A stretch of 64,000 nucleotides of DNA from IMGVR_UViG_3300005965_000002:62001-126000, one strand, 5' to 3'. Counted from the stretch's first letter, positions 41,199 through 61,431 are shown. The notes: generated from the sequence alone by a model not told the origin. Numbers and translations are program-made.

Positions 41199-41211
41199 CA
41201 GGGGAGGACAT

Positions 41212-42189: not shown

Positions 42190-42594
42190 TTGTATAAGAG
42201 TTTAGCTAGTGTAATTAGAAGAATCGCAGCTACTATCGATAACCCCGATTCTGCCTACCAAAACATACCCTACTACCAACCGAGTACAGATATATCTGAT
42301 ATAGGGACTAAAGAGGAGATACAGGACGGACCTCCTTCTCTTTATACAAAACACTTTGATAAGAAAAAGTTTTTGGATACAGTTTACCAGGGACCTAACC
42401 CCCCGGTAACTGATGTTCTTATAAAGGATAGAGAAAGGGCTAACATTAACCCTGGTGATCCTATACAGAATTTGAATGGAGACCCTACTAGGAATCCTAA
42501 TCAAAGTCCTAATGAGAAGTATTTTGAAGACGACTTTGATAGAGATACTATCGGTTTTAATCCGGGAGAAAAAAAAGACTATTATATACCTTAA
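42190..42594 (+). CDS. Hypothetical protein, first of head module
   Basis: GGAGG RBS, TTG start, late-type motif at 42102. Confidence 0.6.
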   Translation: MYKSLASVIRRIAATIDNPDSAYQNIPYYQPSTDISDIGTKEEIQDGPPSLYTKHFDKKKFLDTVYQGPNPPVTDVLIKDRERANINPGDPIQNLNGDPTRNPNQSPNEKYFEDDFDRDTIGFNPGEKKDYYIP

Positions 42595-42604
42595 GGTGGC
42601 GAAT

Positions 42605-42946
42605 ATGGAAAGCAAATTTGAAGAAGCTGTAAAAAGAATGAACAGTAAACTCGCTGGTGAGGAAGACTACAATAAGTCTGTAGTTAATAACCTATATCAG
42701 TGCCTGAGTGAAGGGTTGTCTCCAAAGAAGATGGCTTCGAAGGTAGCTGGTAAGGGAGCTATTAATAACAAAAGCGCTTCCATAAAAATTTCCAGTTTAG
42801 CGGATATGTATAACTTCGATAGGGTCGCTAATGACGTTCTGGTTCATAAGTCTAATAAAGATTTATGGGCTATTGAAGCCGATGATCAAGGTGAGGTGCG
42901 TATAACAAGACTTTTTGATAACAATGGAGAACCCCTTAGGGTTTAA
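42605..42946 (+). CDS. Hypothetical head-module protein
   Basis: Start at MESKF; LVHKSNKDLW; KxAS motifs. Confidence 0.6.
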   Translation: MESKFEEAVKRMNSKLAGEEDYNKSVVNNLYQCLSEGLSPKKMASKVAGKGAINNKSASIKISSLADMYNFDRVANDVLVHKSNKDLWAIEADDQGEVRITRLFDNNGEPLRV

Positions 42947-42961
42947 GCAGTGGAGGACTAA

Positions 42962-43603
42962 ATGTCTAAAAGAATTAGAATGACTGAGAAAGTAGCTGCT
43001 GGACCTAAGGCTAAGAAAGATATACAGGATAATGGTAGGCAGACTGATGGTTTTAGTTATGATAAGTCACATGCTAAAACTTTACAGAAAGTCCTCCATA
43101 ATTTAAATGTAGCCTTAGGTACTCAGATAGCAGCTATGAAGGATTTGGCTATGCTCAGGGGTTCTGATGTTACTCCTGATGGCAAACTGGGGGGACGTGG
43201 GTTTGTTATGGAGTTTAGAGAAATGAAGTCTCTTATTAACGAATCCATTAATAATCTTTCTGATATTACTGACTCAATAGGTGACGAGCTAACAAACCCT
43301 AAATGGGGGTTGAGTAAAAATCAGGTAAATAAGATAGAAAAAGAGAAAGATAAGGTCCAGGATGAGGTTGAGGAAGTACAGGAAGAGATTAAAGAAAAAT
43401 CAGAAGACGATGAGGATTTAAGCCTCGATGATCTTAGAACTAACCAACCTAAAGAATCTGAAGAAATAAGCCCAAAGGACGTGAAAGATTCTAGTTATGT
43501 AGAGTCCGTGAGAAAATATAAAGAGATGTTAGAAGATCCAAATAAGAAAGATAAAGTGGCTGCAGCATTAAGAAGATCAATCCAGGCAAACCTTCTACGA
43601 TAG
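42962..43603 (+). CDS. Hypothetical head-module protein
   Basis: PDGKLGGRGFV core and acidic tail. Confidence 0.6.
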   Translation: MSKRIRMTEKVAAGPKAKKDIQDNGRQTDGFSYDKSHAKTLQKVLHNLNVALGTQIAAMKDLAMLRGSDVTPDGKLGGRGFVMEFREMKSLINESINNLSDITDSIGDELTNPKWGLSKNQVNKIEKEKDKVQDEVEEVQEEIKEKSEDDEDLSLDDLRTNQPKESEEISPKDVKDSSYVESVRKYKEMLEDPNKKDKVAAALRRSIQANLLR

Positions 43604-43614
43604 GAGAATATAAA

Positions 43615-45537
43615 ATGTCTTCACTTGGCGATATTTCCGGTTTCATGAAAGACTCCGGGGCCAAAGTCCCTGATTTGGACTGGCTCCAATTAGATGTTAA
43701 TAATAAGGACAATATTCCTGTCCCTATGAATGTTGAAATTGTTCCTCAGCTTGAAGAAGCGTGGGGACACGATAAAGTTGCTGGTACTACTCATCTGATA
43801 GAAAATCAGTCAGCTACCTACAACCCTTCTTTAGAGAAGAAGGCATCCGATGAAGATGTTAAAAAGGTAGTTGATGCAGCTAAGATAGAAATCATGAGGG
43901 GATCACTTGGTAAGGAACTAACCGAGAAACTAGGTAGCCAGTTCCCTCAAGAAGTAATAGTAGCTGCTAAGGATGAGCTGAAAAAGGTAGCTTCAGAGCA
44001 GGGACTTTTAGGAAGTGTCTACATAGACATCAGTCCTTTTAATTCATGTGCTGAGGCATCTAGAGTTTTGGGTCATAATAAGATTCGAATGGCTAGATAT
44101 GTTGTGGGAGAGCCCAAGAGGCATGTTTGCTCTTCTCATGCTACCGGAGTCTGTAAGGAACTCAAGAAAAAAGTTATTAGCAGCATGGAATATGATGAGG
44201 CTGTTTTAAATGAGTATACTACTCATTTAAAAATAGCGGGACTATTGAGCGCCGATGAAAAAGTTGTTAGTAGGGAAGGCCTGCGTAACGCTATCATAGC
44301 GTCAAAAATGCCTGCTAATAAAAAACAGGAACCTCAGAAAAAACAAGATAGTTCTGAGACTCAAATTGATGCTAGCAAACTTGATGAAAGTTTTGCCAAG
44401 CATCTTGAAAAAGAAGCAGCTGATATCCGTAAGTCTTATGAGTCAGATCGTTTTGAAGAAGCAAGACCTATAGTCGCTTTTATACAGAATGAAATGCTTA
44501 AGGGTAAGATCGGGAATTCTTTAAAAGAGTCAATTCAGAAGAATTTCCCACCGGATACCATTGAGAAGTTTTCTGCTGAGATTAAAAAGATCGCGTCCTT
44601 GCAGGGATTGATGGGTAATGTTTACGTGGATCTTGCTTATTATCCAAATGCTGAAGAAGCCGTAAAGTGTATTAAAACAGCGTCTACTAACCCAGCTTAT
44701 CTGATTAACACCAGACCTACTAATGAATTCGATAATAAGCTGGAAGTAGTAGCTAAGGCTACAGGGTGTCAGATTCTACCTAGAAATGGTGGTATAGATA
44801 AGAAGGTAGCTCATAGCTATATTGATGATCTTGCCTTTTCTGATAAGATTTCATTTGAGCTTTCAAAGGATCTTAAAAATAAGGTTGAGGCCGGAGAAAA
44901 TGTGTTGGCTATAATTAGAAATGCTTTTTTGGCCACACAGCAGCACACCAAGGCTGTTAAGGAAGGTGGAGTGCAAGGGTACTTTGCCTCAATGAATACA
45001 AGTAAATATAAGGATACAGAAAAAATTAAGACAGCCGCATATAAATCTATGGAAGCCGGTATTGAGTATGATAAGGTTTCTGCAAAGATGGCTGAGCTTA
45101 TGCCTACTACAGAAGCACTAAGTGCTGCTCGTACAGTTCTCGGTAGCATGAAAGAGGTTAAAGCTGATATCCTTAATAAGTGCAGCACTGATAAGTACCC
45201 CCTGGCTAAAGATGCTTCCATAGTGCAGGGTAGTAAATGTGCAAGTTGCATCCTCTCTACTGGTAATTCTTGCCTAAAACAGGAAAGAAAATTTGCCGGT
45301 AAAGAGAACATGGATAAACCCGTTGTGAACATCGACCCAAAAACATCGAAAGTCATTTACGATGAAAACCCTGACGTAAAAAGGGCGGACATAAATTCTG
45401 AATTTGAGATGTACGGAGATTTCGGTTCCGGAATGAATATCACCCTGAATGAAATGCGTGATCAGAAAAAAGAAGCAGGACTTGATATTGAAAACGGGTA
45501 CAACATGAATGGCCTGGATGCTGCCTTGTCCGACTAA
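43615..45537 (+). CDS. Putative head protein with internal duplication
   Basis: KKVASEQGLLGSVYID and KKIASLQGLMGNVYVD repeats; Cys clusters. Confidence 0.6.
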   Translation: MSSLGDISGFMKDSGAKVPDLDWLQLDVNNKDNIPVPMNVEIVPQLEEAWGHDKVAGTTHLIENQSATYNPSLEKKASDEDVKKVVDAAKIEIMRGSLGKELTEKLGSQFPQEVIVAAKDELKKVASEQGLLGSVYIDISPFNSCAEASRVLGHNKIRMARYVVGEPKRHVCSSHATGVCKELKKKVISSMEYDEAVLNEYTTHLKIAGLLSADEKVVSREGLRNAIIASKMPANKKQEPQKKQDSSETQIDASKLDESFAKHLEKEAADIRKSYESDRFEEARPIVAFIQNEMLKGKIGNSLKESIQKNFPPDTIEKFSAEIKKIASLQGLMGNVYVDLAYYPNAEEAVKCIKTASTNPAYLINTRPTNEFDNKLEVVAKATGCQILPRNGGIDKKVAHSYIDDLAFSDKISFELSKDLKNKVEAGENVLAIIRNAFLATQQHTKAVKEGGVQGYFASMNTSKYKDTEKIKTAAYKSMEAGIEYDKVSAKMAELMPTTEALSAARTVLGSMKEVKADILNKCSTDKYPLAKDASIVQGSKCASCILSTGNSCLKQERKFAGKENMDKPVVNIDPKTSKVIYDENPDVKRADINSEFEMYGDFGSGMNITLNEMRDQKKEAGLDIENGYNMNGLDAALSD

Positions 45538-45573
45538 GCAGCATTCAGCGTTTATATAACATAGGAGACATAT

Positions 45574-46260
45574 ATGCCAGATGATTCAATGGATCTCAAC
45601 TTAGACGAGATTCTTGAAACTGCTGAATTTGAGGATGAAAAAAATCCTATTGATATAGTAGAGAGAGAAAAGGGCGAAACAGAAGATATTAAGGATCTTG
45701 AATCCGAGATAGGTAAGGTACAAGAAAGCCATGATAAGGGTGAAGAGAGAGAATTAATAAACGAGCCCCAGGATCTTTTAGCTATTAATGTAAAAGGGCA
45801 CAGCCAGCTACAGCAGCTTATAGAAGACCCTTTAGAGAATGATGATCTATATCAGGCAATAGATAATGACGACCCCGCTCCGGCATTACTAAGGAGCGCC
45901 ATGAAGGAGTATGCAGAAGAGATAGCATACTTAAAGGCATGGAGGAAACATAATTATAAGTTAGACGCCGATATGACATCCGAGATATCTGATAAAAGGA
46001 TGAAAGCATTATTTAATCTTGTAAAGGCCGTACTTGAAAGAGAAAAGATAGCCAGTAAGCAAAGTAAAGGTAAGATAGATTTTCACGGAGAAAATTTTGC
46101 AAAGGTTTTTCAGTTTTTTCTCCAAGAGGTTCAGGAGACTTTTAAGACTGTAAATATACCAGAGCAGTATCAAAAGATCTTCTTTCCGCAGTTAGCAAAA
46201 CGACTGGACGGTTTTGAGAAAAAGGCGGAGAGGATATACTACGGGAAATCTCCTAGATGA
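45574..46260 (+). CDS. Putative terminase small subunit
   Basis: Helical protein overlapping the start of terL; positional inference only. Confidence 0.4.
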   Translation: MPDDSMDLNLDEILETAEFEDEKNPIDIVEREKGETEDIKDLESEIGKVQESHDKGEERELINEPQDLLAINVKGHSQLQQLIEDPLENDDLYQAIDNDDPAPALLRSAMKEYAEEIAYLKAWRKHNYKLDADMTSEISDKRMKALFNLVKAVLEREKIASKQSKGKIDFHGENFAKVFQFFLQEVQETFKTVNIPEQYQKIFFPQLAKRLDGFEKKAERIYYGKSPR

Positions 46261-48134: not shown

Positions 48135-48144
48135 GATAGAAAAA

Positions 48145-51100
48145 ATGTCACAAAAATTTCAGGATCAGTTTTATTCTAACATAATAGTATACGATGAAAG
48201 AAAAAGGTACTATTACTTGTGGGCTCGTAAGAATAAGCCTTTGTTAGATGATGAGATTAGAAATTCTCAGTTAGCTATAGTAGATCAGGTTCGTCGCTCT
48301 ATCCAAAATGTGAGCGGTGATGTTTGCGTCCCTATCTCTCCGTATTCAACTAATAATCAGACAAACCCTTTTTCTATTACAGTTCCCGATGTGTATTCAG
48401 ACAATTTTATAGTAAAGGGAGGAAATGGGTTAGAGGCTCCCGCTGTAATGTTTGTAAAAGGATTTTACGTATTCTTGCCTGGAGATATTACATATAGAAA
48501 TCAGAATGATGCTGGTGGTAAATCAATAACGGATGAAGAGTACACAAAGACACCAATACCTGATATTTCAGAACCAAATGAGGATCGTATTGATATTATT
48601 TATGTCGATCTTCATTTTGGAGAGGTGTCTGCTACAGACTTAACTGAATATAAAGATACTAATTTAAGAAATCCTATAGTTGGAACGGAAACAGCAAATA
48701 GGCTAAGAGCTGTTTTTGATATTAGAATTTTAGAGGGGTTTACGTCATCTATAGATGAGAATATATTTAATAGACCCGAATTTTTAGGATCTATATCAAG
48801 TGATGACCCGGAAGCTAATCCTATATATAAAGAGCATTTTAAGGTTCCTATAGCAGTAGTATACAGGGAAGCCAACAAACCGTTAGATTCAAGTACTAAG
48901 ATAGTAGATCTACTTTCACTATATAACAAAAGAATACTTTCTTTAAATGAGATTACTTACAGAACCCTGCACGGAGGTTATGGAGAGACCGCTGTATATG
49001 AGCTAGGGATAAACCAGAACAATCCTAGATTCCCTCACGCTAAGTTAGATGAGGGGGCTTATGCTACAGGACTCAATCAGGGATTCGATACACAGGCATT
49101 TAATACTGATTCCGTAACTCCTCGCGTCCTCGATTCCGATGGTAAATTTGCTGTGGGAGGCCTCCTCGTCGGAAGAGAAGACTCTGAAAAAACGTATCCC
49201 ATTACCTCTGAGACTGGCCCGGTAGGATTATCTGATGGCGAAGCAATGGCGAATCAGATATCTTCAAAATCCGTATATATAGGATATGATAGAGGAGTCA
49301 CAGGATTAAGAGAATACCATGATCGTCTTAATATCCATATGCAAGGCATTACTGGGTTTGCTGGTCTAAGGATTATAAACGAAACCGGGGAAACAGGATC
49401 CATATCTGCCCATATAAAAGGAAAATCCGGTTCAGACGAAAATAATGTGTTTATCGATTATTTGGGTAGGTTAGGGATAAACACTCAGTATCCAGGGTGG
49501 ACCGCTGTAAATACTTTATGGAACACATCAGATGATAATATCGTTTTAGATGTTAATGATTCTGTAAGAATATGGCGGAACCAGTTTATTAAAGGTGACC
49601 AGTATATAGAAGGTAGTGCCTTTGGACAGGGGTGGCAAATACCGCAAAACCCTGAGGCACGTACCCCGGCTGCGTTTGGGTTTACCGGTATCACAAATCA
49701 GACAAGTGGAGTGATTCCAACAGATGATCTAGGTATTACGGGCAGAGCCGCTGTATACTTCAAACCGGGTGTGGCTGTTGTAGGTCACAAGGATGTTCCT
49801 GGGTATACAGGAAATTTTGGTTTTTATGAGGCTTTTGATTCTGATGGCGGCAGAGTTTTCACTATCGGTAGTTTAGGTGAAGATTTTGATAGGACTGTAA
49901 GAACTCTCTTTGGAGTAGGTTTTAGAACTCTATTTTTGACAGATTACAGTTTGTTATACCTACCACAGGGATATGGTCAAATCACGGGAGCAGATTCTCC
50001 ATGGGATCCTGATAAATTAGAAGTTACAGGTTTTGATTATAACGGTAATTTGGTCAATTTTACATATGAGATGCAGTCAACTGTAGGGTTAACCGGTATT
50101 TTTGAATTTGGGCAAGCGCTTGAAAACAATTTCCCCCAAACTAAAGCCCAGATAATACTGGACCCATTTGATGAATCTAGGGATCCGGGCGATAGAGCCG
50201 AGACACACGGGCAGTTAATTATAAAGGATTTGCAGGATAGGTCCTCTTTTAACATAAAATCAGTAAAACTTTATAGGGATAATTGGTTCACACCCCCCGG
50301 AGGCGGTGACTACTTAGAAATCCCTATGGTTGAGTCAAAATTTTTTGGATCCGGTAACCTAGGCGGTAATGTACTTGATCTTAAGTTCGCCAAACTTGAT
50401 CTTGGTGAAGCTGCTAACGCTTGGTTATTTAACGGAGACGTTTTCTTTAATGGTATCGGTGAACTCAATAGAGTCACATTTAGCCCCAACGTTCTTTTCC
50501 GGAACGATGTCTTCGTATATGGAAACTTTGTAGCAGATAGCTTGCTTTTTAATTACGCTAAAGTTAATAGTATGCAAGTTAATAATCAGCTAAAAGTAGA
50601 TGATGATCTAGCTGTTGGAGAGCATGCTGTTTTTGGTTATGATCTGGATGTGGCTTTTTCAAGGCTGAATTTGCAAATAAATATTAACGAAAATCTTACT
50701 TTACTAAATAACGGAGATATGCTGTCTGCTAAATACATAGCTCAGACGACAGGAGACTATGATGATGTTGACATAGATGTCTACGGAAGTTTTATAACAC
50801 AAACTAGAAGATATGGTTATGATCTCAGTCTGAAAATAGGTGGAAAATTCGGGAGTGATACAGACCCCTTAGGAATACATCTGATAGATAATAGATCAGG
50901 CATAACTTTAAATTCCGGGGATAGTCCTGATACTATAGTGTTTGACTACGGAAACGGTAGGGGTGATTACGGGACTCTTAATATAAATGTGAGGGGTAAT
51001 CTAACAGCTTCACAAGGAGTTTTGGCTGCAAACGTATCAGCGGGATCCGATCTCACGGAAGCTAACACTGATTATGCCCTCTATGTAAGCGGTGACAGCC

Positions 51101-52173: not shown

Positions 52174-52175
52174 AT

Positions 52176-52364
52176 ATGCCTGGAGATTTAAAAGATCAAG
52201 AATGGTCAGCCTGGCCTGGATATTATGATCAAAGGTACCAGGATAATCCCGGATTTACTTACATGCCGGAGCCTAAAAGTGAGCAGGTACAGGTAAAAAG
52301 AATAATGAAAAGAATTCGAAAAAAATTCTTAAATGGGGAAGATCCAGATGGCAAATCCAAATAA
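52176..52364 (+). CDS. Small hypothetical protein
   Basis: Tightly coupled ORF. Confidence 0.5.
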   Translation: MPGDLKDQEWSAWPGYYDQRYQDNPGFTYMPEPKSEQVQVKRIMKRIRKKFLNGEDPDGKSK

Positions 52365-52686: not shown

Positions 52687-52695
52687 GAGATATAA

Positions 52696-55600
52696 ATGGC
52701 TGGGAGAAAAACAGGGAACAAAGGAACAACACCAAAGACTACGGTCACTAAGACTGCCTCTGAGGATTTAACTGTCCAGGAAGTACGTGGGGTAAAACCT
52801 ACTATGAAATTAACTGATAAAGAAAAACAAGTACGTGCGTTGAAGAAGTATGCTACTACCTCCTTTGGTTTTGGTAGTAGGGTAAGTTCAATGTACGGAA
52901 ATACGATGTTAAGTAATGAGGGTAATTTTTATTCTCCCCAGCTAAGTACAGACTTTCTTGAAAAACCACAAAATTTAAGAGAGAGACGGGCTTGGTATAG
53001 GCACTTCTATAATAGTAATGAGTTTGTAGGATCAGCAATAGACTTGCATTCCACCCTGCCTTTATCCAAAGTAAAACTGGAAAAGCCTAAGTGTAAAAAC
53101 CCAAAAATGGCACAATATGTTTATACGTTTTTTGAGGACATGTGCCAAGATATGAGACTGTTCAAGGTTCTTACAGAAATAAGCCACGAGTACTGGCTGA
53201 TGGGAAATTGTCTGGGAAAGAACTCAAAGCTTAGGTGTGTGGACTCTTATAAGAAAGCTGTTGATGTATCAGTAGGGGATTATGTACTTACTCATGAGGG
53301 TAGATTTAGAAGAGTAAAGAATAAATTTTCTCGGTACTCAGAAAAAATAACAAATATAGAAATGTGGAAAACTTATAAGAAGTTGGATCTTACAGAAGAA
53401 CATCCGGTTGAAGTTTATAGAAATGGTAAATTTGAATTTATAGAAGTCAAAGATCTAACGGAAGATGATTACATACGTGTAACATGGGTAAAAGATATAG
53501 ATGATGTAAAAACCATAAATTACTTAGAGAGTTTTAAAAATTTGGATATTACAGAATCTGGATATACGAAAGAAACAAATATAAAGAGAAAAAGAGCTAA
53601 GAAATCTCATGAATGCAGATTAAAGATGCTATTTTGGTTATCCAATTTAACGGAGCCTGTGATCAAGTCTAGAGATGACATAGCCTTTGATTTGAATGTT
53701 GAAAGAAAGACACTAGATAATGTTTTAACACAGTTAAATAAAGAATTTGGTAAAAGCAGATATAGTAGAAGAATAGGAGCGTCCAACTATCAAAAAGGAT
53801 CAAGGGTAGAGTGGCTACCTTTTAAATATTCTGATGTTGATAGCTGTTATGAGATAAAAAGGATAGAAAATTTTACCACTCCCCACACGGTTGATATTGA
53901 TGAAGATTTCTGCTATTTACTCGGGTACTGGATTGGGGATGGAACAATTTCAAGAGATAATAGTAGAAAGAATATTTGGGGAAGAGCTATATGGAATATT
54001 GTTTTTGGTGATAGCTCTGATAAACAAAAAGAAAAAATATATAGAATATTGCAGGAAAAGATAGGTATACAATGTATTAAGGAATGGGATTCCTACAGAG
54101 ACTGTGGAGATGGTAAAGTTAGTAAGCTTAGTACTGTTAAGATTAAGAGTAATCCTGCGTTTGTAGAGTGGTGGGCTAATAATTTTGGAGAGACTACAAA
54201 AGGTGATAATAGGAAAAAGATACCTTTATGGGTTTCTAAATTGCCCTTAAATAAGCTATATGCTCTTATAGCTGGTTTAGTTGATTCTGACGGATGTATA
54301 TCAAATGGTGTTTGTGATATTAGTTTATCTTCAGAATCATTGATTAGTTCTATACAGGAAATTTTGCTGAAATGTAATATTGTGCCTAATATTAATAAAA
54401 AGGAAGGAACTAAAGGAACAGGTGTTTTAAACAATAATGGAAAAATCTATAGCGATGTATATAAAGTTGTATTTAAAGCTAGAGATTTTTCTTCTTTTGT
54501 AGGAAACTATTCTATAAAGGGCGCAAAGTATTCGGATATAAAGCAAGAAAAGCCATACCTAAGCAAATACATAATTACAGATAATGGTGATATAGCATTT
54601 AAAGTAAAAAAGATAACAGAATCTGAATATAATGATATGGTTTTTAACTTTGAAGTGGAAGAAGACCATACTTTTCAAGTAGAGGGTTTTTCCACACACA
54701 ACTGTTTTCCTTTTGCCGAAGACCACGATCCTTACGATGGTGATGAGCAGACTGTAGCCCATCTTAAAGAAGAGGGTAGACAGAGAGCTGAGTACCTGTG
54801 GGAAAATTTTAAAGTAAGAGACAAAGACCCTAATTACAAAGGTTGGAGAAAAATTATCATTTTACCCCCGGATCAGGTTCGGGTAAGAAATGTCCTGTTG
54901 TCCGACCAAGAATCAATTATAGAATTCATGCCTGACCCGGAGACAAAAAAGTTAATAATGGGAGAGGGGTTAGGTAGGGTGTATGGCTATAGTGAAAGTA
55001 TGCAAATAAGCGAGATGGAAAAGAACATAAGCGTACCTGAAAAAATGAGGGATCAGATTAGAGAGGGGGGATCCATACCTCTAGATACTGATCCATATAC
55101 AGGTTCTCACGTTTACCACTTAGCCAGGAAAAAGAGCCAGTATGAGACACTGGGTGTATCAATATTAGAGAGATGTATCAATACCCTCCTTTTTGCCGAT
55201 AAAATCCGTCAGGCTCAGACTTCTATAGCCTCTCGACATATGACCCCTATTAGAATTGTATGGGCAGAGGAGCTCAATGAGGCGGATGTTGAAGCTCTGA
55301 GAGAACAGGTAGACCTTGCTCTAGTGGATCCAGATTATTCCATTATAACCAATTACCAAGTAAATTGGGAAGAGATGGGAAGTAATGGAAGATTGTTGGA
55401 GTTATCTACAGAGTACGAGCATATAGAGAATTCTTTGTTTGCTGGTTTAAATGTCACTAGGGAAATTCTGACCGGTGAAGGTTCATACTCTGGTAGCCGA
55501 ATTACCCTGGAGGTAATGAATCGAATCTATCTGCTCTTCCGAGATAGCATCCAAGAGTACATAGAAAATTATCTCTTTAAGCCCGTGGCCCATAAAAAGG

Positions 55601-56139
55601 GATTTGTTGAGAAAGATGAGTTTGGAAGAGAGCGGTTGATTTATCCTAAGCTGTCCTTCACGAGACTCGCTATTAAGGATAATGATGTTTATTTTGACCA
55701 GGTAAATCAGCTATATCAGAAGGGTTCGGTATCAGTAGATGTTATCTTGGATATGCTTGGTATTGATCCTGACGCTACAAAAGAAAAAATTGAAGCGGAT
55801 CTATTCACTGTTAATGACGCCTCCTTTAACGCTTTTATGCAGTCCCTATACACCGCTGTCGGATCTGACTTCTTCCAAAAGTATGATGTTGAAGGGGCTC
55901 TGGCTAAGTATCTCAGGATACCGGAGCTTGTGCAGCCTGCCGGAGAAGAAGAAGGAGGTTTAGGCGGAGCAGGTCTGGGAGGCGGACTAGGCGGAGGAGA
56001 AGCTCGGTTTGCTTCAGAAGATACTTCTGATATGACAGAGAGAAGGAAGGCGGCATTGCAGAAATTGATGAAGATAGCTATCAAAAACCCAGATAAACTG
56101 GATAAGCTAGCTCAAATTTTCGACCGTAAGAGAATATAA
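52696..56139 (+). CDS. Portal protein, intein-containing
   Basis: FVGSAIDLHS..P, EYWLMGN, HLARK..Y..G.SIL pattern; ~650 aa after splicing; lies between terL and the protease. Confidence 0.8.
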   Translation: MAGRKTGNKGTTPKTTVTKTASEDLTVQEVRGVKPTMKLTDKEKQVRALKKYATTSFGFGSRVSSMYGNTMLSNEGNFYSPQLSTDFLEKPQNLRERRAWYRHFYNSNEFVGSAIDLHSTLPLSKVKLEKPKCKNPKMAQYVYTFFEDMCQDMRLFKVLTEISHEYWLMGNCLGKNSKLRCVDSYKKAVDVSVGDYVLTHEGRFRRVKNKFSRYSEKITNIEMWKTYKKLDLTEEHPVEVYRNGKFEFIEVKDLTEDDYIRVTWVKDIDDVKTINYLESFKNLDITESGYTKETNIKRKRAKKSHECRLKMLFWLSNLTEPVIKSRDDIAFDLNVERKTLDNVLTQLNKEFGKSRYSRRIGASNYQKGSRVEWLPFKYSDVDSCYEIKRIENFTTPHTVDIDEDFCYLLGYWIGDGTISRDNSRKNIWGRAIWNIVFGDSSDKQKEKIYRILQEKIGIQCIKEWDSYRDCGDGKVSKLSTVKIKSNPAFVEWWANNFGETTKGDNRKKIPLWVSKLPLNKLYALIAGLVDSDGCISNGVCDISLSSESLISSIQEILLKCNIVPNINKKEGTKGTGVLNNNGKIYSDVYKVVFKARDFSSFVGNYSIKGAKYSDIKQEKPYLSKYIITDNGDIAFKVKKITESEYNDMVFNFEVEEDHTFQVEGFSTHNCFPFAEDHDPYDGDEQTVAHLKEEGRQRAEYLWENFKVRDKDPNYKGWRKIIILPPDQVRVRNVLLSDQESIIEFMPDPETKKLIMGEGLGRVYGYSESMQISEMEKNISVPEKMRDQIREGGSIPLDTDPYTGSHVYHLARKKSQYETLGVSILERCINTLLFADKIRQAQTSIASRHMTPIRIVWAEELNEADVEALREQVDLALVDPDYSIITNYQVNWEEMGSNGRLLELSTEYEHIENSLFAGLNVTREILTGEGSYSGSRITLEVMNRIYLLFRDSIQEYIENYLFKPVAHKKGFVEKDEFGRERLIYPKLSFTRLAIKDNDVYFDQVNQLYQKGSVSVDVILDMLGIDPDATKEKIEADLFTVNDASFNAFMQSLYTAVGSDFFQKYDVEGALAKYLRIPELVQPAGEEEGGLGGAGLGGGLGGGEARFASEDTSDMTERRKAALQKLMKIAIKNPDKLDKLAQIFDRKRI
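53209..54702 (+). mobile_element. LAGLIDADG intein (498 aa) in portal
   Basis: LMGN|CLGKNSKL..LTEEHP..STHN|CFPF; LLGYWIGDG and LIAGLVDSDG. Confidence 0.93.
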
Positions 56140-56519
56140 TGAAGTATAAGTTAATCTCCGATTTTATAAAAAAGCTTTCTTATGAATTAGAAATCGACCC
56201 GCCAAAAAGGGAAGAAGGGGGCTCTGGGTTTATTAAAAATCCAGTAGTTAAGAATATTAAGCCTAGACCTGCAGAAGAAATCTACCAAGAAGATGTTGAA
56301 CAAGAAGAAACACAAAGTCCTCGTTCATTTAAAAGACCGTCAGATGAGTTAGTAGAGCATGAGTATGAAAAAACCGATAAGCCCCATGTTAAGCCTGAAA
56401 GAGGCAAGCCCGCTCCTCAGAAATGGGATTATAAAGATACTATGACAGATTATATGAGAGAATATAGGCGTCAAAATAAGGACTTAGATACAGGTAATAG
56501 ATATATAAAAAGGAAATAA
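56139..56519 (+). CDS. Hypothetical head-module protein
   Basis: Coupled to the portal stop; YMREYR motif. Confidence 0.55.
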   Translation: MKYKLISDFIKKLSYELEIDPPKREEGGSGFIKNPVVKNIKPRPAEEIYQEDVEQEETQSPRSFKRPSDELVEHEYEKTDKPHVKPERGKPAPQKWDYKDTMTDYMREYRRQNKDLDTGNRYIKRK

Positions 56520-56546
56520 CCTCAGGATTTTTATATCAAGGAGTTT

Positions 56547-56843
56547 ATGATGGCGAAAGTTCCAAGACCCATGGTTAAACAGATTGAAAATATCGAAGAG
56601 ATTATTAAAAGTCTCTGCGATCTTGTGAACGATAGTAAAATAAAGCTTGAGTATTATGGCAAGGATTTTTTGGAAGAGTTGTCAGAAATCAGGCAGTCAG
56701 GTTTGGAGTTAAGAGATCGTTTGGAAATTTTTAAGAATAAGATGGAGTATGCTGCTAACGAGCAATTTAATAGCAGCAGCCGGTTCGCATCTACAGATTC
56801 CGTGAAAAGAGTGGTAGATGGATATTTATCTAGAAACTCCTAA
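56547..56843 (+). CDS. Hypothetical head-module protein
   Basis: AGGAG RBS; RFAS motif. Confidence 0.55.
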   Translation: MMAKVPRPMVKQIENIEEIIKSLCDLVNDSKIKLEYYGKDFLEELSEIRQSGLELRDRLEIFKNKMEYAANEQFNSSSRFASTDSVKRVVDGYLSRNS

Positions 56844-56869
56844 CATAATCTATTAATATCACTCAATAA

Positions 56870-58087
56870 GTGACTGTAGTGTATCAGAAAGGATCTGTAA
56901 TGGCCAAAAATATATATAGTGAAAGTCAGGCAAGTCAGAACGATTTACGCTATTTACTAGGTCCCTGTGAAAATAAGGGTATAAAGATAGATCTTTCTGA
57001 TGCCAAAGCTAAAGCAAAAAATCTTTTGCTGAAGCATCCAGAGATTCTTCATGATGGTAGACATCTTTTTCGAAATGAAAATGGCACTACTATTGTACAG
57101 GAAATAGTACCCCGAGGAGACCAAGGCCTGCCCCGTGTTTTAAATCAAGGTGACTTAAATGATATGGATCTTAAAGGTTTGGCTGATTATGCAGCTAAAT
57201 TAGTTGATCCCTGTCTTCTCCGGTACGACAGGAGAGTTGCCCTGGAAGATGCTTTAAAGAAGGCAATTTGGGAAAAAGATTCTGGAATGTATCAAGGTAA
57301 AGTAAATACCAATACATTTTGTTTACTCATAGATTTAATGGGTAATAACACAAAGAATGCTAGCGGTGATACTGAAGAGGGTAATAAAGAGAAACCGGAT
57401 AAAGAACCTGAGGAAAAGAAGGTAGTACAGGTAACTGAGGTCACAAGGAAAATAATGACACCTGAGCAAGAAGCTGAGTTAAAGGGTGAAGGTACTGGTG
57501 ATACTAAAGGTGTACCAGAAAGTGACAAGATAAAGCATCGTAAGTTCCTGGAGAGAAAGGAAGAGGAAAAGAGTCAAGAAGAATCTGATAAACCTCGTCG
57601 TAAAAAAGATAAAACCAATCCTGAAAAGGAGAATAAGAAGATGGATAAAGCAGCAGCCTTAAAAAAGATCGAAGCCATGCAAAAAGCAATCGAGGAGATG
57701 AGGGGTGTACTTGCTTCTGATGATACAGAAGAAAGAACAGCATCCGAAGAAGTGAATGGTGTAGCTCCTATCATAGACTCTCTTGATAAGATCGCTGGTG
57801 AATTAGAAGAAACCGGTGACATTGAGCTCATGAAGGTAGCTTACGGTATTGACGTCGTTTCTGATGTCCTGGAAGGTAAGAAAGAAGCCAAAGTGCTTGA
57901 GCATGATCTTGATGAAAAGTTCATGAGAGAGTATTTCAAGGGTGGTGTGCGCGAAGGTGAAGCTGATGAAAAGAAATATATGAAGCAGTTTGATAATGAC
58001 GATTCCGCTGCTGTAGAAAACGTCAAAGATAAGAAGAGTAGAACTGCTTCCGAGAAGACTAAAAGACCGTACACCAGAATCGACTAA
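56870..58087 (+). CDS. Charged putative internal head protein
   Basis: Late-type motif upstream; KNAS and RTAS motifs; start may be MAKNI. Confidence 0.55.
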   Translation: MTVVYQKGSVMAKNIYSESQASQNDLRYLLGPCENKGIKIDLSDAKAKAKNLLLKHPEILHDGRHLFRNENGTTIVQEIVPRGDQGLPRVLNQGDLNDMDLKGLADYAAKLVDPCLLRYDRRVALEDALKKAIWEKDSGMYQGKVNTNTFCLLIDLMGNNTKNASGDTEEGNKEKPDKEPEEKKVVQVTEVTRKIMTPEQEAELKGEGTGDTKGVPESDKIKHRKFLERKEEEKSQEESDKPRRKKDKTNPEKENKKMDKAAALKKIEAMQKAIEEMRGVLASDDTEERTASEEVNGVAPIIDSLDKIAGELEETGDIELMKVAYGIDVVSDVLEGKKEAKVLEHDLDEKFMREYFKGGVREGEADEKKYMKQFDNDDSAAVENVKDKKSRTASEKTKRPYTRID

Positions 58088-58108
58088 GATTTAAGAAGGG
58101 AAGGTACC

Positions 58109-58681
58109 ATGCCTGGATTATTTCCAAATCCTTCCGCTGCTCCGGAGGTTTTTAACATCGGCGATCCTGTACGCTGGTACATAGATGAGAAGTCTGTATC
58201 ACCGTACGTAGGTAGAGTAGTCGCTGTTGAACCTGCTATCTATAAAGTTTGGGTAGAATGGCCCGTCGGTGGAAAAAGACAACATTCACCGGAAGAGCTT
58301 ATTTTGGTCCCTCCTCAGGACGGAAGACCTACGGTTGAAGGGGAATCAGGATACACAAACTATGGTATCCAGGAATCTTACGAAGATTTTGGTAAGCTGG
58401 AGAGTGAGAAGGCTAAGAAGTTAGCTAAGGATATCGTGTCTAAGGTGAAGAAGGATACGAACAAGAATACTAAGATACAGAAGATGGCTTCTAAAATAGC
58501 TGGTAAGTTTGCCTCCGATGTCGTAGATAAGATTTCTACTGATATCGTAGAGTGCAAAGATAAGGGTTTTAATGAAGTCTATACCTATCAGAATATATAC
58601 AAAAAATACTCCAATACTTGTTCTGATCATTTCATTAGGTACGCTATCGAGAAGATTTATAATGAATTAAATCAGGAGTAA
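58109..58681 (+). CDS. SH3-like hypothetical head protein
   Basis: FNIGDPVRW..GRVVAV..VWVEWP..PEEL. Confidence 0.55.
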   Translation: MPGLFPNPSAAPEVFNIGDPVRWYIDEKSVSPYVGRVVAVEPAIYKVWVEWPVGGKRQHSPEELILVPPQDGRPTVEGESGYTNYGIQESYEDFGKLESEKAKKLAKDIVSKVKKDTNKNTKIQKMASKIAGKFASDVVDKISTDIVECKDKGFNEVYTYQNIYKKYSNTCSDHFIRYAIEKIYNELNQE

Positions 58682-58684
58682 CCT

Positions 58685-60253
58685 ATGGCAATGCCTAAGT
58701 ATGGACACGCTGTTGTCGTAGGACACAGTATTGATCCTGGAAGATGGATAGATAAGAAGGTTGCTCCCGGAAGGGTAAAAGTAGCAAAAAGAGTCATAGC
58801 TGATTATGACCCGTCTAGGTGGTTGCTTAGCCATGCTACTATTATTGCGTCTGTTGACGTTGATCAGAAGGATCCAAGTGATCCGAAAAGTAATTATCTG
58901 ATTAAGCCCGAATACTCCGTATTTGTTAATAATAACGGAGACTCCTGGGAAAGAGGCCTTCTTAAAAATTGTTACCACACCTTTATAGGTGCCGATAACT
59001 ACGTCGAGCACGTTCAGATTCCCGAGCTCTCTAAGGGAAAAATTATCGATGCCGCTATACGTGAGGTGCCTTTCGCTAAAGATTCCGAGGGTAATGATTT
59101 AACAACTCTCTACGTTGATATTCTTGTAGCTACCAGTTTAAAGCATAAAGACCTTGTGCAGAAGATTAAGACTGGGGACTATAATGCAATGTCAATGGGC
59201 TGCCTTATAGAATATTCTCAGTGTAGTAAGTGTGGTAATATAGCCAAGGATGAGACACAAGCATGTAAGCATATCCTCTATTTTAAGAAAAATTTCTTCT
59301 ACGATGAGGGAGGAAATAAGAGGATCATAGCTGAGCTTTGTGGTAGATCTGAAGATCCTGATAGTTGTAAGTTCATAGAAGGTAGCTGGGTTAAGAAACC
59401 CGCCTTCGAAGGAGCTCTTCTTAGGAATATTGTTAATCCTTCAGAAGGTATGGGTGAAAAGTTACAAAATGCTATAGCGGTCCCTTCTGCCGTTCCCACT
59501 ATGACTGACTTTTCAAAAGCCGCATCGTTAACTGCTGGTAATTTAGTACGCCAGATACAGGCCCAGGAAGAGGGTGAAGCACCTGCAGAAGCGCCAAAGG
59601 ATGATGCTGGTTTTCCTGAAGCTCCCGAAGGAGAGGGTGCTCCGTTAGAGCTGGATAAGCCCGGAGAAGAAGCCACCCCGGATGCGGGAGGAGCTGGAGG
59701 TGGTTTAGGTGGTGTACCTGCAGAAGGTCCCGGTGCTGAGCCTGTCGCTCCAGTCCCTGAAGGAGATGCTACTGTTAAGGAAGTTAAGGATCTCCTAAAG
59801 AAACATGTTTTACAAGAAATACGTGATGAATTAATACAGAAGAACTATAATGTAGAACCAAGAAATTTAGATGTTAATCCGGGCCTGGAAAATGATATGA
59901 ATGAGTCTCTAGTTAAAGAGGCAACATTCAAGAGGGTAATGGCTTCTGCAAAGAAATTAGGTAATGATAGATTAACAAACGGATTATTTATACTTACAAA
60001 TTTGAGGGATTGGAAAAGCCTAAAAAGATATGGTTATAGTCGAGAAGATGTAATAGGAATGATGCACTATATAGATAAAGTTGCTTCTAAAGAACCGCTT
60101 GATACTGATGTTGTAAAGGCTCTGGTTTCTATAAAGGAATCATCGGATTTAACAGATTTTTTTACTGAAATTATTGTAGAAACAGGTAAAGAATTAACCG
60201 CTAGCCAGGCAAAAAAGTTAGCTGGTTGGCGAAAAATATTGAAAAAAATATAA
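58685..60253 (+). CDS. Prohead (maturation) protease with Zn finger and acidic linker
   Basis: NNNGD, VEH..GKIIDA, AMSMG, CSKC..CKH, E.SWV..PA; lies between portal and scaffold. Confidence 0.72.
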   Translation: MAMPKYGHAVVVGHSIDPGRWIDKKVAPGRVKVAKRVIADYDPSRWLLSHATIIASVDVDQKDPSDPKSNYLIKPEYSVFVNNNGDSWERGLLKNCYHTFIGADNYVEHVQIPELSKGKIIDAAIREVPFAKDSEGNDLTTLYVDILVATSLKHKDLVQKIKTGDYNAMSMGCLIEYSQCSKCGNIAKDETQACKHILYFKKNFFYDEGGNKRIIAELCGRSEDPDSCKFIEGSWVKKPAFEGALLRNIVNPSEGMGEKLQNAIAVPSAVPTMTDFSKAASLTAGNLVRQIQAQEEGEAPAEAPKDDAGFPEAPEGEGAPLELDKPGEEATPDAGGAGGGLGGVPAEGPGAEPVAPVPEGDATVKEVKDLLKKHVLQEIRDELIQKNYNVEPRNLDVNPGLENDMNESLVKEATFKRVMASAKKLGNDRLTNGLFILTNLRDWKSLKRYGYSREDVIGMMHYIDKVASKEPLDTDVVKALVSIKESSDLTDFFTEIIVETGKELTASQAKKLAGWRKILKKI

Positions 60254-60357
60254 AAATATTTAGATAATCCTAATTATCTATTAATATTATCAAATTTAAC
60301 GAATTGGAATATACGAAATTTTTTCTGATTTCTCAGCAATAAGTCAGGAGGATATGA

Positions 60358-61431
60358 ATGACTAGGAAAAGATTGACAGACAAAACCGCCGAGTGGCTGC
60401 AGTCTAAGCCGGGCCAGGTGGTAGAGGGCAAGGGATCCGGAATCGATAACGATCCGTATAATATGAATGACACGGGTCATGAGAAGAACGATCCTAAGAT
60501 GGATCAGTATGCAAGTGGAGATCCTTCTGCTTGGGGTGAAGATGTAAACAAGGACAAATGGTGGGATGGTGAGGAGTCTCGTAATGAGATGAATGTTGCT
60601 GAGATGGGTAAAGGTACTCCTAAGAATGCTGCACAGGCTATTAAGGCTGCTCGTCAGATGGAAGAGCGTGCTTACAAGTGCATCGTTGCTTCGCAGCGTA
60701 TCCTTCCTGGTGCTCCTGATAATATTATTGAAGCCCAGGCTATGGAACTCCTTAATCTCCCTGTAGCTGCTATCGATAACATGCTTGGTCGCCAGGAAAA
60801 GCTTGCTAAGATGATCGCTGAAGCTGCTGAGAAAGCTGCTGAGGATAGCGAAGAAGAAGAAGAGACTGCGGATCCTGCTGAGGAAACTGCGGATCCTGCT
60901 GAGGAAGAAGAAAAAGATAAGAAGAAGGATAAGAAGGATAAGAAGGATAAGAAGGACTGGCTTTCTGCTAAAAAAGCTGCCATCGCAGAATTGAAAGCAA
61001 AGCTTGCTGAAGAAGAAGCAAAGATCGATGATGCTGAAGAAGAAGCAAAGATCGATGATGATGAAGGCGAAGGAAACAATAAAAAGAGAGCCAAGGATAC
61101 TGAGACAGAACCTGGCCGTCAGCCTCAGGAAGAGGGTGACATAGAAGAAAAGCATAGCGAAGGAAAGAAATCTAAAGAAGAAAAGAAGCCTGCTGAAGAC
61201 ATGGGAGAAGTAGAAGCTAAAGGTAAAAGCTGCAAGTCTGCTTCTGATGAAATTGAGCTGACTGCTTCTTCTGACAACCTTCTCGATGATATCTTCTCAA
61301 GCGTTACTGCTTCTGATGAGAAGAAGGGTGCAAAGACTCTTTCTGGTATCGTGAAGAAAGAAGCTTCTGAGGGTTCAGATAATTTGTCAAATCTTTGGCG
61401 TACAGATCCGGACGTAAGTTCGAATTTCTAA
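60358..61431 (+). CDS. Putative scaffold protein
   Basis: Highly charged, low-complexity protein upstream of decoration and MCP genes. Confidence 0.6.
   Translation: MTRKRLTDKTAEWLQSKPGQVVEGKGSGIDNDPYNMNDTGHEKNDPKMDQYASGDPSAWGEDVNKDKWWDGEESRNEMNVAEMGKGTPKNAAQAIKAARQMEERAYKCIVASQRILPGAPDNIIEAQAMELLNLPVAAIDNMLGRQEKLAKMIAEAAEKAAEDSEEEEETADPAEETADPAEEEEKDKKKDKKDKKDKKDWLSAKKAAIAELKAKLAEEEAKIDDAEEEAKIDDDEGEGNNKKRAKDTETEPGRQPQEEGDIEEKHSEGKKSKEEKKPAEDMGEVEAKGKSCKSASDEIELTASSDNLLDDIFSSVTASDEKKGAKTLSGIVKKEASEGSDNLSNLWRTDPDVSSNF
60862..61062 (+). repeat. In-frame tandem repeats in scaffold
   Basis: 21-bp x2 (ETADPAE), 9-bp AAGAAGGAT x4 (KKD), 27-bp x2 (AEEEAKIDD). Confidence 0.85.

What the first reader, a model, noticed from the sequence alone, without database searches (positions are those of the whole stretch)
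42190..61431. Recurrent [KR]-x-A-[SA] motif across head proteins: candidate maturation-protease site
Seen: KMAS and KSAS (42605); KVAA x2 (42962); KKAS, KVAS, KEAA, KIAS, KTAS, KTAA (43615); KTAS near the portal N-terminus and RFAS near its C-terminus; RFAS (56547); KNAS and RTAS x2 (56870); KMAS and KFAS (58109); KAAS and KVAS (protease); KSAS and KEAS (scaffold). Many flank charged disordered segments. Established: T4 and phiKZ prohead proteases cut many head proteins at short motifs ending in Glu, and herpesvirus assemblins of the same fold cut Ala-Ser. Inference: a head-wide processing system with Ala|Ser specificity, which also predicts which unknown ORFs are internal head proteins.
Basis: partly seen in the sequence, partly recalled or inferred. 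Interest (0 to 1): 0.75.

Follow-up and report, generated by a model that had tools for sequence, protein, structure and literature searches.

The report
Predicted head-protease cutting motif, jumbo phage
A short Lys/Arg-x-Ala-Ser/Ala motif is about four times too frequent in this giant phage's head genes, is conserved in relatives as distant as Bacillus phage G, and most likely marks where a herpesvirus-like capsid protease cuts; no cut has been measured.

Summary
In the head module (42.4-62.1 kb), [KR]-x-A-[SA] occurs 33 times against 8.3 expected from within-protein shuffles (z 8.9). The rest of the 258.6-kb genome shows 60 against 57.7. An unbiased scan of all gapped patterns puts K.A and K.AS first. 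Permuted control motifs and T4/phiKZ-type x-E motifs are not enriched (T4-type [LI]-x-E only weakly, z 2.1). Codons at the sites vary, so the signal is at the protein level.

Sites keep their position in relatives while their flanks diverge. K-A-A-S lies just after the protease domain, and its second Ala is invariant in 113 of 113 homologs. Conserved sites also sit 12-41 residues from the C-termini of the scaffold, portal and three small proteins, each followed by a conserved tail. The protease domain has the herpes assemblin/T4 gp21 fold (Z 11.6 and 9.8) with invariant His109 and Ser170. The same enrichment appears in the head modules of seven metagenomic relatives, phage G, Tunturi_5 and LR745208.

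The best reading is a clade-wide prohead protease with P3 Lys/Arg and P1 Ala specificity and a herpes-like release-site/maturation-site layout. Cleavage itself is inferred, and several instances inside folded domains are probably not cut. This is a new variant of a known kind.

The parts
58685..60253 (+). Prohead protease gene (522 aa). It has an N-terminal assemblin/gp21-fold domain (about residues 41-252, nt 58805-59440), a linker, and a C-terminal helical domain (about residues 360-522).
   Evidence: PHROG 18299 'head maturation protease'. AF2 model with pLDDT above 85 over residues 40-240. VIA-align matches: VZV protease Z 11.6, T4 gp21 Z 9.8, HCMV protease Z 9.1. 959 metagenomic homologs.
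59009..59011 (+). His109 codon, the candidate catalytic histidine (in the Glu-His pair).
   Evidence: H in 112 of 113 homologs. Equivalence to the catalytic His of gp21 or assemblin is inferred, not superposed.
59192..59194 (+). Ser170 codon (Ser-Met-Gly), the candidate catalytic serine.
   Evidence: S170, M171 and G172 are invariant in 113 of 113 homologs.
59516..59527 (+). K278-A-A-S281, the predicted autocatalytic release site between the protease domain and the C-terminal domain.
   Evidence: A280 is invariant in 113 of 113, A279 in 106 of 113, and K/R precedes them in all rows displayed, within an otherwise variable linker. The fourth position varies (S, A, K, M, G, R, T, N, H) in distant homologs. 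Phage G gp19 and Tunturi_5 gp331 carry KVAS/KIAS after their protease domains.
60358..61431 (+). Scaffold-like protein (357 aa). Candidate sites: N-terminal K9-T-A|E (nt 60382-60393), KNAA89 (60622), KSAS293 (61234), and KEAS334 (61357), which lies 21 residues from the C-terminus and precedes a conserved tail.
   Evidence: By eye in the alignment, KEAS334 is kept in 8 of 8 sequences and KSAS293 and KNAA89 in about 7 of 8 within a few columns, while the acidic low-complexity sequence between them is unalignable. Strict column conservation: KEAS334 1.0/0.86/1.0, KNAA89 0.57/0.71/1.0, KSAS293 0.57/0.57/0.57. The scaffold shares an N-terminal signature with 42962 that is found in only these two proteins of the genome.
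52696..56139 (+). Portal protein (1147 aa including an intein). Candidate sites: KTAS19 (nt 52750), KYAT at about residue 58, and RFAS1104 (nt 56005), which follows a Gly-rich linker 41 residues from the C-terminus.
   Evidence: PHROG portal families and intein Pfam hits. RFAS1104 column conservation is 1.0/0.86/0.86 with flank identity 0.23.
56547..56843 (+). 98-aa head-module protein with RFAS79 (nt 56781), 17 residues from the C-terminus.
   Evidence: RFA[SA] is present in all 5 sequences (window plus 4 orthologs).
56870..58087 (+). 405-aa acidic head-module protein. Candidate sites: KNAS162 (nt 57353), RTAS289 (57734), and RTAS391 (58040), which lies 12 residues from the C-terminus and precedes a conserved Pro-Tyr tail.
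   Evidence: A C-terminal [KR]xAS is present in 7 of 8 sequences. 4 observed against 0.61 expected.
58109..58681 (+). 190-aa protein immediately upstream of the protease, with the overlapping run KMAS-KIAG-KFAS (nt 58481-58516).
   Evidence: A [KR]xA[SATN] stands at or within a few columns of KFAS133 in all 8 sequences by eye. The strict column count is lower: K/R 0.57, Ala 1.0. 3 observed against 0.28 expected.
42962..43603 (+). 213-aa scaffold-like acidic protein. Candidate sites: N-terminal KVA|A (residue 10, nt 42989) and C-terminal KVA|A (residue 198, nt 43553), 13 residues from the end.
   Evidence: The N-terminal site is present in 5 of 5 sequences and the C-terminal site in 4 of 5. The N-terminal signature is shared with the scaffold.
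43615..45537 (+). 640-aa conserved protein of unknown fold with 12 [KR]xA[SAG] instances. KKAS75 (nt 43837) lies at the boundary between a disordered N-terminal region of about 77 residues and the folded body.
   Evidence: 12 observed against 1.87 expected. AF2 gives pLDDT below 50 up to about residue 70 and a helix from residue 79. Sites at 124, 325 and 354 are conserved but lie inside folded repeats. The distant homolog in LR745208 has 10 instances against 1.3 expected.
42605..42946 (+). 113-aa protein with KMAS, KVAG and KSAS (nt 42728-42781).
   Evidence: Orthologs of the same length keep K[SA]AS at the first position. 4 observed against 0.34 expected.
62094..62975 (+). Major capsid protein (293 aa) with KTAA19 and KLAA26 (nt 62148-62180) after a variable N-terminal 18 residues.
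   Evidence: PHROG 2522. Both motifs are conserved, also in Tunturi_5, but absent in phage G gp27. This is a weak candidate because the whole protein is highly conserved.

Best explanation
The motif marks substrate sites of the phage's own prohead maturation protease (gene 58685-60253). This is a serine protease with the herpesvirus assemblin/T4 gp21 fold. It appears to recognise Lys/Arg at P3 and Ala at P1, prefers a small P1' residue (Ser, then Ala, then Gly), and often has acidic residues after the site.

The inferred sequence of events is as follows. The protease enters the prohead through its C-terminal helical domain and frees itself at K278-A-A|S281, a release-site analogue. It then clips short conserved C-terminal anchor tails from the scaffold (KEA|S334), the portal (RFA|S1104) and the small proteins 56547, 56870 and 42962. 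It removes short N-terminal leaders from 42962, the scaffold and perhaps the portal, and possibly a disordered N-terminal region of about 77 residues from 43615. It also cuts inside acidic disordered stretches so that core proteins can leave before DNA packaging.

Shown here: the enrichment, the positional conservation, the fold, the invariant His and Ser, and the spread of the motif across the clade. Inferred: that cleavage occurs, that the bond cut is Ala|Ser, and which sites are used.
For: - Enrichment is confined to the head module (z 8.9 against 0.3 for the rest of the genome) and is top-ranked in an unbiased pattern scan. The P1' class matters: [KR].A[SAG] has z 9.0 but [KR].A[^SAG] only z 1.2.
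- The signal is at the protein level, because codons at the sites vary.
- K-A-A-[S] lies 30-35 residues after the protease domain, and A280 is invariant in 113 of 113 homologs down to 38% identity, in a variable linker.
- Sites near the C-termini of five proteins are each followed by a conserved tail, and motif positions are kept where the flanks are only 17-55% identical.
- Motif K/R and Ala columns are more conserved than other K/R and Ala columns (0.66 against 0.49, p 0.014; 0.64 against 0.49, p 0.02).
- The fold matches VZV, HCMV and KSHV proteases and T4 gp21. His109 is nearly invariant (112 of 113) and Ser170 invariant.
- The same enrichment occurs in seven metagenomic relatives, phage G (19 against 6.7), Tunturi_5 and LR745208.
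- The P3-x-P1 layout matches the known T4, phiKZ and SPN3US motifs, which also include C-terminal autocleavage of the protease (PMC5694885). The release-site and maturation-site logic and Ala-Ser/Thr bonds match herpes assemblin (PMC4498786).
Against: - There is no experimental terminus for any protein of this clade. The phage G capsid paper that might hold mass-spectrometry data is not in the library.
- The protease has no Pfam hit. It does not align significantly with T4 gp21 by profile (E 0.12), and Foldseek against the PDB found nothing. Fold assignment therefore rests on one aligner.
- Several motif instances lie in confidently folded helices (43615 residues 124, 325, 354; protease 465), where cleavage is unlikely. 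The AF2 model also places the 278-281 site in a moderate-confidence helix.
- Strict column conservation is only moderate for some sites.
Confidence: 0.7

Rival explanations
1. The motif is a short linear docking or assembly signal that is bound but not cut. It could be recognised by the portal, the capsid shell, the scaffold core or a protease exosite to recruit proteins into the prohead.
For: Head-restricted enrichment and positional conservation fit a binding motif equally well. Two proteins share an N-terminal leader that contains the motif, which resembles a capsid-targeting sequence.
Against: The best-conserved instance sits exactly at the protease-domain boundary. Many sites are followed by separately conserved tails that look like the actual anchors. 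Known relatives of this fold use P3-x-P1 motifs of this length as cleavage sites.
Confidence: 0.12
2. The motif is a structural by-product: helix-capping or amphipathic Lys/Ala periodicity typical of scaffold-like coiled coils and of one duplicated domain, with no role as a recognition site.
For: The instances at 43615 residues 124 and 325 belong to an internal repeat in well-folded helices. KMAS-KIAG-KFAS in 58109 has period 4. AF2 predicts helix around several sites.
Against: Within-protein shuffles and permuted motifs control for composition and show no excess. Many sites lie in disordered acidic or Gly-rich stretches. The dependence on P1' class and the invariant Ala in a variable linker are not expected of generic helices.
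Confidence: 0.1
3. The sites are cut, but by a different protease: a host enzyme or another phage enzyme, not the product of 58685-60253.
For: Nothing here links enzyme and substrate directly. The complex prediction gave no answer. The record is estimated to be only 55% complete, so other proteases could be missing.
Against: The motif co-occurs with this protease family from this phage to phage G. The protease itself carries the best-conserved site. No ClpP-type gene is present in the record.
Confidence: 0.05

Closest known systems
Herpesvirus assemblin (pUL26/pUL26.5, MEROPS S21) with release and maturation sites
   Same: - The protease domain has the same fold (VZV Z 11.6, HCMV 9.1, KSHV 7.3).
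- The protease domain is followed by a conserved x-A|S-type site and then a C-terminal helical domain.
- The scaffold carries a site about 20 residues from its C-terminus, before a conserved tail.
- P1 is Ala and P1' is Ser or Thr (PMC4498786).
   Different: - P3 is Lys/Arg here. The hydrophobic P4/P3 preference of the herpes sites is from my own knowledge.
- The scaffold is a separate, non-overlapping gene whose tail differs from the protease C-terminus.
- There is no detectable sequence similarity and no Pfam Peptidase_S21 hit.
- An invariant Cys/His cluster is inserted after the catalytic Ser.
- Many more substrates are predicted.
T4 gp21 (S77) and phiKZ gp175/SPN3US gp245 (S80) prohead proteases
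   Same: - Same fold (5jbl Z 9.8).
- Same head-wide processing of many proteins at a three-residue P3-x-P1 motif.
- Same C-terminal autocleavage of the protease.
- Extra motif copies inside propeptides (PMC5694885; PMC10052503).
   Different: - Those enzymes cut after Glu ([LI]-x-E, [SAG]-x-E, A-x-E). Here the [SAG]-x-E and A-x-E motifs are not enriched and [LI]-x-E is only weakly so (z -0.6, 0.5, 2.1), and P1 is predicted to be Ala.
- In SPN3US nearly all cuts remove N-terminal propeptides. Here many predicted cuts remove C-terminal tails.
- Profile comparison with gp21 is not significant.
Head module of Bacillus phage G (gp14 portal, gp19 protease, gp27 capsid protein), Tunturiibacter phage Tunturi_5 and cluster C mycobacteriophages
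   Same: - Homologous protease (32-44% identity over the domain) and capsid protein (27-50%).
- Same motif after the protease domain (KVAS/KIAS) and the same head-module enrichment in phage G and Tunturi_5.
   Different: - The phage G and Tunturi_5 proteases are about 290-300 aa and lack the long C-terminal domain.
- The phage G capsid protein lacks the N-terminal KTAA/KLAA pair.
- Enrichment is weak in the one cluster C locus sampled (17 against 10.4).
- No cleavage specificity for this lineage was found in the searchable literature.

Membership tests
Assemblin/gp21-fold prohead serine proteases (MEROPS clan SH: S21, S77, S80) | Characteristic beta-barrel protease fold | tested here: met
   AF2 model residues 41-252 align to VZV protease (Z 11.6), T4 gp21 (Z 9.8), HCMV protease (Z 9.1) and KSHV protease (Z 7.3), which are the top four of 48,161 chains. 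Foldseek missed them.
Assemblin/gp21-fold prohead serine proteases (MEROPS clan SH: S21, S77, S80) | Conserved catalytic Ser and His | tested here: inconclusive
   His109 (112 of 113) and Ser170 (113 of 113, Ser-Met-Gly) are conserved. Their structural equivalence to the catalytic residues of gp21 or assemblin was not checked residue by residue, and the third triad member was not identified.
Assemblin/gp21-fold prohead serine proteases (MEROPS clan SH: S21, S77, S80) | Sequence membership in a curated S21/S77/S80 family | tested here: not met
   No Pfam family at E 0.01 or better. The profile against PDB sequences found nothing. hhalign against T4 gp21 gave E 0.12 over 24 columns. Only PHROG 18299 'head maturation protease' matches.
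Assemblin/gp21-fold prohead serine proteases (MEROPS clan SH: S21, S77, S80) | Gene sits in the head module between the portal and the scaffold/capsid genes | tested here: met
   The order portal, small proteins, protease, scaffold, 183-aa protein, capsid protein is conserved in seven relatives, and the corresponding order is seen in phage G.
Assemblin/gp21-fold prohead serine proteases (MEROPS clan SH: S21, S77, S80) | Proteolytic activity and autoprocessing | not testable with these tools
   Only the conserved candidate site at residues 278-281 can be shown.
Herpes-type Ala|Ser specificity with release and maturation sites | Invariant Ala at P1 and a small P1' residue | tested here: met
   A280 is invariant in 113 of 113 and P1' is mostly Ser. 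[KR].A[SAG] has z 9.0 against z 1.2 for other P1' residues. This holds only if the cut is after Ala.
Herpes-type Ala|Ser specificity with release and maturation sites | A site between the protease domain and a C-terminal assembly domain, and a site just before the scaffold's C-terminal tail | tested here: met
   K278-A-A-S281 follows the domain, which ends at about residue 250. KEAS334 lies 21 residues from the scaffold's C-terminus in 8 of 8 sequences, before a conserved tail.
Herpes-type Ala|Ser specificity with release and maturation sites | Experimentally mapped scissile bond | not testable with these tools
   No proteomic data were available, and the complex prediction gave no answer.
T4/phiKZ-type head-wide processing after Glu | Cleavage motif ending in Glu ([LI]-x-E, [SAG]-x-E, A-x-E) | tested here: not met
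   In the head module these motifs have z 2.1, -0.6 and 0.5, against z 8.9 for [KR].A[SA].

The most novel reading that the evidence does not exclude
A very large, mostly uncultured clade of jumbo and mega phages, running from this phage to Bacillus phage G, matures its capsids with herpesvirus-style logic. An assemblin-fold protease is tethered to an assembly domain through a release site. A separate scaffold is detached from the shell at a maturation site before its C-terminal anchor. P1 is Ala and P1' is Ser. Under this reading, Ala|Ser specificity and the release/maturation-site architecture are either ancestral to the phage-herpesvirus lineage or arose twice on the same fold. The motif could then be used to annotate head-internal and ejected proteins in hundreds of unannotated huge-phage genomes.
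Probability: 0.35. Interest if true: 0.75.

Novelty: new variant of a known kind. Interest (0 to 1): 0.62.

Why it matters
Prohead proteases of this fold are known to cut after Glu in T4 and phiKZ-like phages and at Ala|Ser in herpesviruses. A phage branch with a Lys/Arg-x-Ala|Ser rule and a release/maturation-site layout would add specificity and assembly logic to the fold similarity that already links phages and herpesviruses.

It would also give a simple sequence rule for finding processed head and ejection proteins in the phage G-like huge phages. At least 959 protease homologs are already in metagenomes, and almost all head genes in this group are unannotated.

The claim is directly testable. 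Existing virion mass-spectrometry data of phage G could be re-searched, or a single co-expression experiment could be run.

Tried and rejected
- Megablast of 56-64 kb against GenBank phages found no match.
- A peptide-pattern scan of IMG/VR with the protease found no relative.
- Pfam has nothing for the protease, scaffold, 43615, 56870, 58109, 42962 or 48145 beyond the portal intein.
- Foldseek against the PDB and a profile against PDB sequences gave nothing for the protease. Only the exhaustive VIA-align search found the fold.
- hhalign of the protease family against T4 gp21 was not significant (E 0.12).
- Complex prediction of the protease domain with the scaffold's C-terminal 42 residues returned no answer (score 0.01). 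It is not evidence either way.
- The 640-aa protein 43615 was modelled well, but its fold matched nothing informative in the PDB or BFVD, so its function stays unknown.
- No sequence similarity was detected between 61492 and the phage G decoration protein gp26, so it is not named as a decoration protein.
- Literature searches found no phage K/R-x-A|S specificity. The phage G capsid paper PMC7316594 is not held, so prior knowledge for phage G cannot be excluded.
- A DNA-level repeat was rejected as the cause of the motif because codons at the sites are diverse.
- The genome has no ClpP-type alternative protease, but the record is estimated to be only 55% complete.

Full report
**Context.** The window is bases 62,001-126,000 of a single 258,580-bp phage contig with 38.6% GC. 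CheckV estimates the record at about 55% complete. The region 42-63 kb is a head-morphogenesis module on the + strand. In order it holds:
- a conserved 134-aa gene (42190-42594), a 113-aa gene (42605-42946), a 213-aa acidic protein (42962), and a 640-aa protein (43615);
- a 228-aa protein (45574), the large terminase (46257), and a 1342-aa unknown (48145);
- two small ORFs, then a portal interrupted by a LAGLIDADG intein (52696, 1147 aa);
- four small proteins (56139, 56547, 56870, 58109), and the protease (58685, 522 aa);
- a scaffold-like protein (60358), a 183-aa protein (61492), and the major capsid protein (62094).

- Against within-protein shuffles, the 17 head-module proteins carry 33 [KR]-x-A-[SA] against 8.3 expected (z 8.9). 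They carry 21 [KR]-x-A-S against 4.1 (z 8.0), and 9 [KR]-x-A-S-[DE] against 0.6 (z 11).
- The other 256 crudely called ORFs of the genome carry 60 against 57.7 (z 0.3).
- Motifs with the same residues in other orders are not enriched.
- To guard against a hand-picked pattern, I ranked all gapped tri- and tetrapeptide patterns by head-versus-rest enrichment. K.A (p 1e-11) and K.AS (8.4-fold, p 3e-9) came first, followed by related patterns: KVA, KK.A, AS.D, K.AA and K.AG.
- The P1' class is part of the signal. [KR].A[SAG] has z 9.0, while [KR].A followed by any other residue has z 1.2.
- T4-type [LI]-x-E is only weakly enriched (z 2.1). The phiKZ-type [SAG]-x-E (z -0.6) and A-x-E (z 0.5) are not enriched.
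- Codons at the sites are varied (AAA/AAG/CGG/AGA; all four Ala codons; both Ser codon families). The signal is therefore selected at the protein level and does not come from a DNA repeat.
- Genome-wide, the four proteins most enriched for the motif all lie in the head module.

**The protease.**
- Gene 58685 has at least 959 homologs in metagenomes, on contigs up to 496 kb.
- In an alignment of 113 of them, the N-terminal 250 residues are highly conserved. Ser170-Met-Gly is invariant and His109 nearly so (112 of 113). A Cys/His cluster is also conserved: C180, C183 and C194 are invariant, and C173 and H196 nearly so.
- An AlphaFold2 model is confident over residues 40-250.
- Foldseek found nothing. 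An exhaustive structural search put VZV protease (Z 11.6), T4 gp21 (Z 9.8), HCMV protease (Z 9.1) and KSHV protease (Z 7.3) at the top of 48,161 chains.
- There is no Pfam hit, and no significant profile match to T4 gp21.
- This is therefore a divergent member of the fold class, not of a curated family.

**Comparative evidence that the motif is functional.**
- In the variable linker after the protease domain, K/R-A-A-S (residues 278-281) is almost invariant. A280 is present in 113 of 113 homologs and A279 in 106 of 113. The fourth residue drifts to A, K, M, G, R, T, N or H in distant homologs.
- That pattern is what a site cut after Ala would show. P3 and P1 are constrained and P1' is tolerant. 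The P3-x-P1 layout is the same as in the T4, phiKZ and SPN3US motifs (PMC5694885).
- I fetched syntenic head modules from seven relatives whose proteases are 39-83% identical. I also fetched the region upstream of the terminase from four relatives.
- By eye in the alignments, motif positions are retained while their flanks diverge:
  - RFAS79 of 56547, in 5 of 5 sequences;
  - the C-terminal RTAS391 of 56870, in 7 of 8;
  - a [KR]xA site at or near KFAS133 of 58109, in 8 of 8;
  - scaffold KNAA89 and KSAS293 (about 7 of 8, within a few columns) and KEAS334 (8 of 8), separated by unalignable acidic repeats;
  - portal KTAS19, KYAT at about residue 58, and RFAS1104, which follows a Gly-rich linker;
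  - both KVAA sites of 42962;
  - K[MSA]AS of the 113-aa protein.
- Strict column counts are lower for sites in gappy regions, for example K/R 0.57 at KFAS133, KNAA89 and KSAS293.
- Overall, motif K/R and Ala columns are more conserved than other K/R and Ala columns in the same proteins (0.66 against 0.49, p 0.014; 0.64 against 0.49, p 0.02). The motif instance in the terminase does not keep its Ala.
- The head-module enrichment recurs in all seven relatives and in LR745208. It also recurs in Tunturiibacter phage Tunturi_5 (gp328 11 against 2.7; gp332 7 against 1.9) and in Bacillus phage G (19 against 6.7).
- Phage G gp19 and Tunturi_5 gp331 carry KVAS or KIAS directly after their protease domains.

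**Anatomy suggests a mechanism.**
- Five proteins have a site 12-41 residues from the C-terminus, followed by a separately conserved tail. The residues left after the predicted cut number 21 for the scaffold, 41 for the portal, 17 for 56547, 12 for 56870 and 13 for 42962.
- This mirrors the herpesvirus maturation site, where the scaffold's capsid-binding C-terminal tail is cut off. The site after the protease domain mirrors the herpes release site (PMC4498786).
- 42962 and the scaffold share an N-terminal leader (Met, basic residues, Leu/Met-Thr, then K-x-A). It is found in no other protein of the genome and resembles a cleavable capsid-targeting leader.
- In the 640-aa protein, KKAS75 lies at the junction between a disordered N-terminal region of about 77 residues and the folded body.

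**Caveats.**
- Cleavage is not shown anywhere in this clade. The library holds no report of this specificity, and the phage G capsid paper could not be read.
- Not every instance is a plausible site. 43615 residues 124, 325 and 354 sit in confidently folded, internally duplicated helices.
- Protease residue 465 is only partly conserved.
- The capsid protein's KTAA/KLAA pair is conserved, but so is the whole protein, and the pair is absent in phage G.
- The complex prediction gave no answer.

**Verdict.** The motif is real, is selected at the protein level and is clade-wide. It is best explained as the recognition site of an assemblin/gp21-fold prohead protease with P3 Lys/Arg and P1 Ala specificity (confidence about 0.7). 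Rivals are an uncut docking motif (0.12), a structural by-product (0.10) and another protease (0.05). It is a new variant of a known kind of system.

Noticed in passing
window 52696-56139 (about nt 53332-54702): The portal gene carries a LAGLIDADG intein (Pfam Intein_splicing, residues 213-669, and LAGLIDADG_3). Orthologous portals without it are 636-672 aa. In relatives L002 and L016 the intein sits in the terminase gene instead.
   Followed up: partly
window 63062-64000 (the ORF continues to genome position 127032, 656 aa): A LAGLIDADG homing-endonuclease-like ORF lies directly downstream of the capsid gene. Similar ORFs occupy the same position in L004 (800 aa) and L008 (615 aa).
   Followed up: no
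window 59201-59341 (protease residues 173-219): A conserved Cys/His cluster (C173, C180, C183, C194, H196, C219) is inserted just after the catalytic Ser. It looks like a zinc-binding site and is also present in phage G gp19 and Tunturi_5 gp331. From my own knowledge, it is not a described feature of T4 gp21 or the herpes proteases.
   Followed up: partly
window 48145-52173: A 1342-aa ORF between the terminase and the portal is conserved in relatives (34-69% identity). It has no Pfam or PHROG hit and contains no motif instance at all (0 against 0.69 expected).
   Followed up: no
window 42190-42946: The mechanical ORF 42476-42946 overlaps a conserved gene (42190-42594, TTG start, 134 aa). The downstream gene really starts at the ATG at 42605 (113 aa, with orthologs of identical length). 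Some relatives carry an extra CxxCxxCC-domain gene here.
   Followed up: yes
window 40251-41838: A 5'-3' exonuclease gene and a sigma-70 region-4-like factor gene lie immediately upstream of the head module. This synteny is conserved in four relatives. The factor may be a late-gene sigma factor.
   Followed up: no
window 43615-45537: The 640-aa protein contains an internal duplication (K-x-A-S-[EL]-Q-G-L-[LM]-G-[SN]-V-Y-[IV]-D at residues 124 and 325). It also has an invariant C-terminal Cys cluster (C523, C542, C545, C553). Its fold matched nothing known.
   Followed up: partly
L003:14836-16256: In one relative, an IS200/IS605-type pair (Y1 transposase plus a TnpB/Cas12f-like gene) is inserted just downstream of the capsid gene.
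   Followed up: no
genome positions 131083-131880, 165655-166425, 241551-243314 and 174555-175829 (outside the window): After the head module, these are the next proteins most enriched for the motif (4 against 0.65, 3 against 0.42, 4 against 0.96 and 4 against 1.14 expected). They are candidates for further processed virion proteins.
   Followed up: no
window 56870-56900: The GTG start at 56870 is probably wrong. Orthologs align from the ATG ten codons downstream, at 56900.
   Followed up: partly
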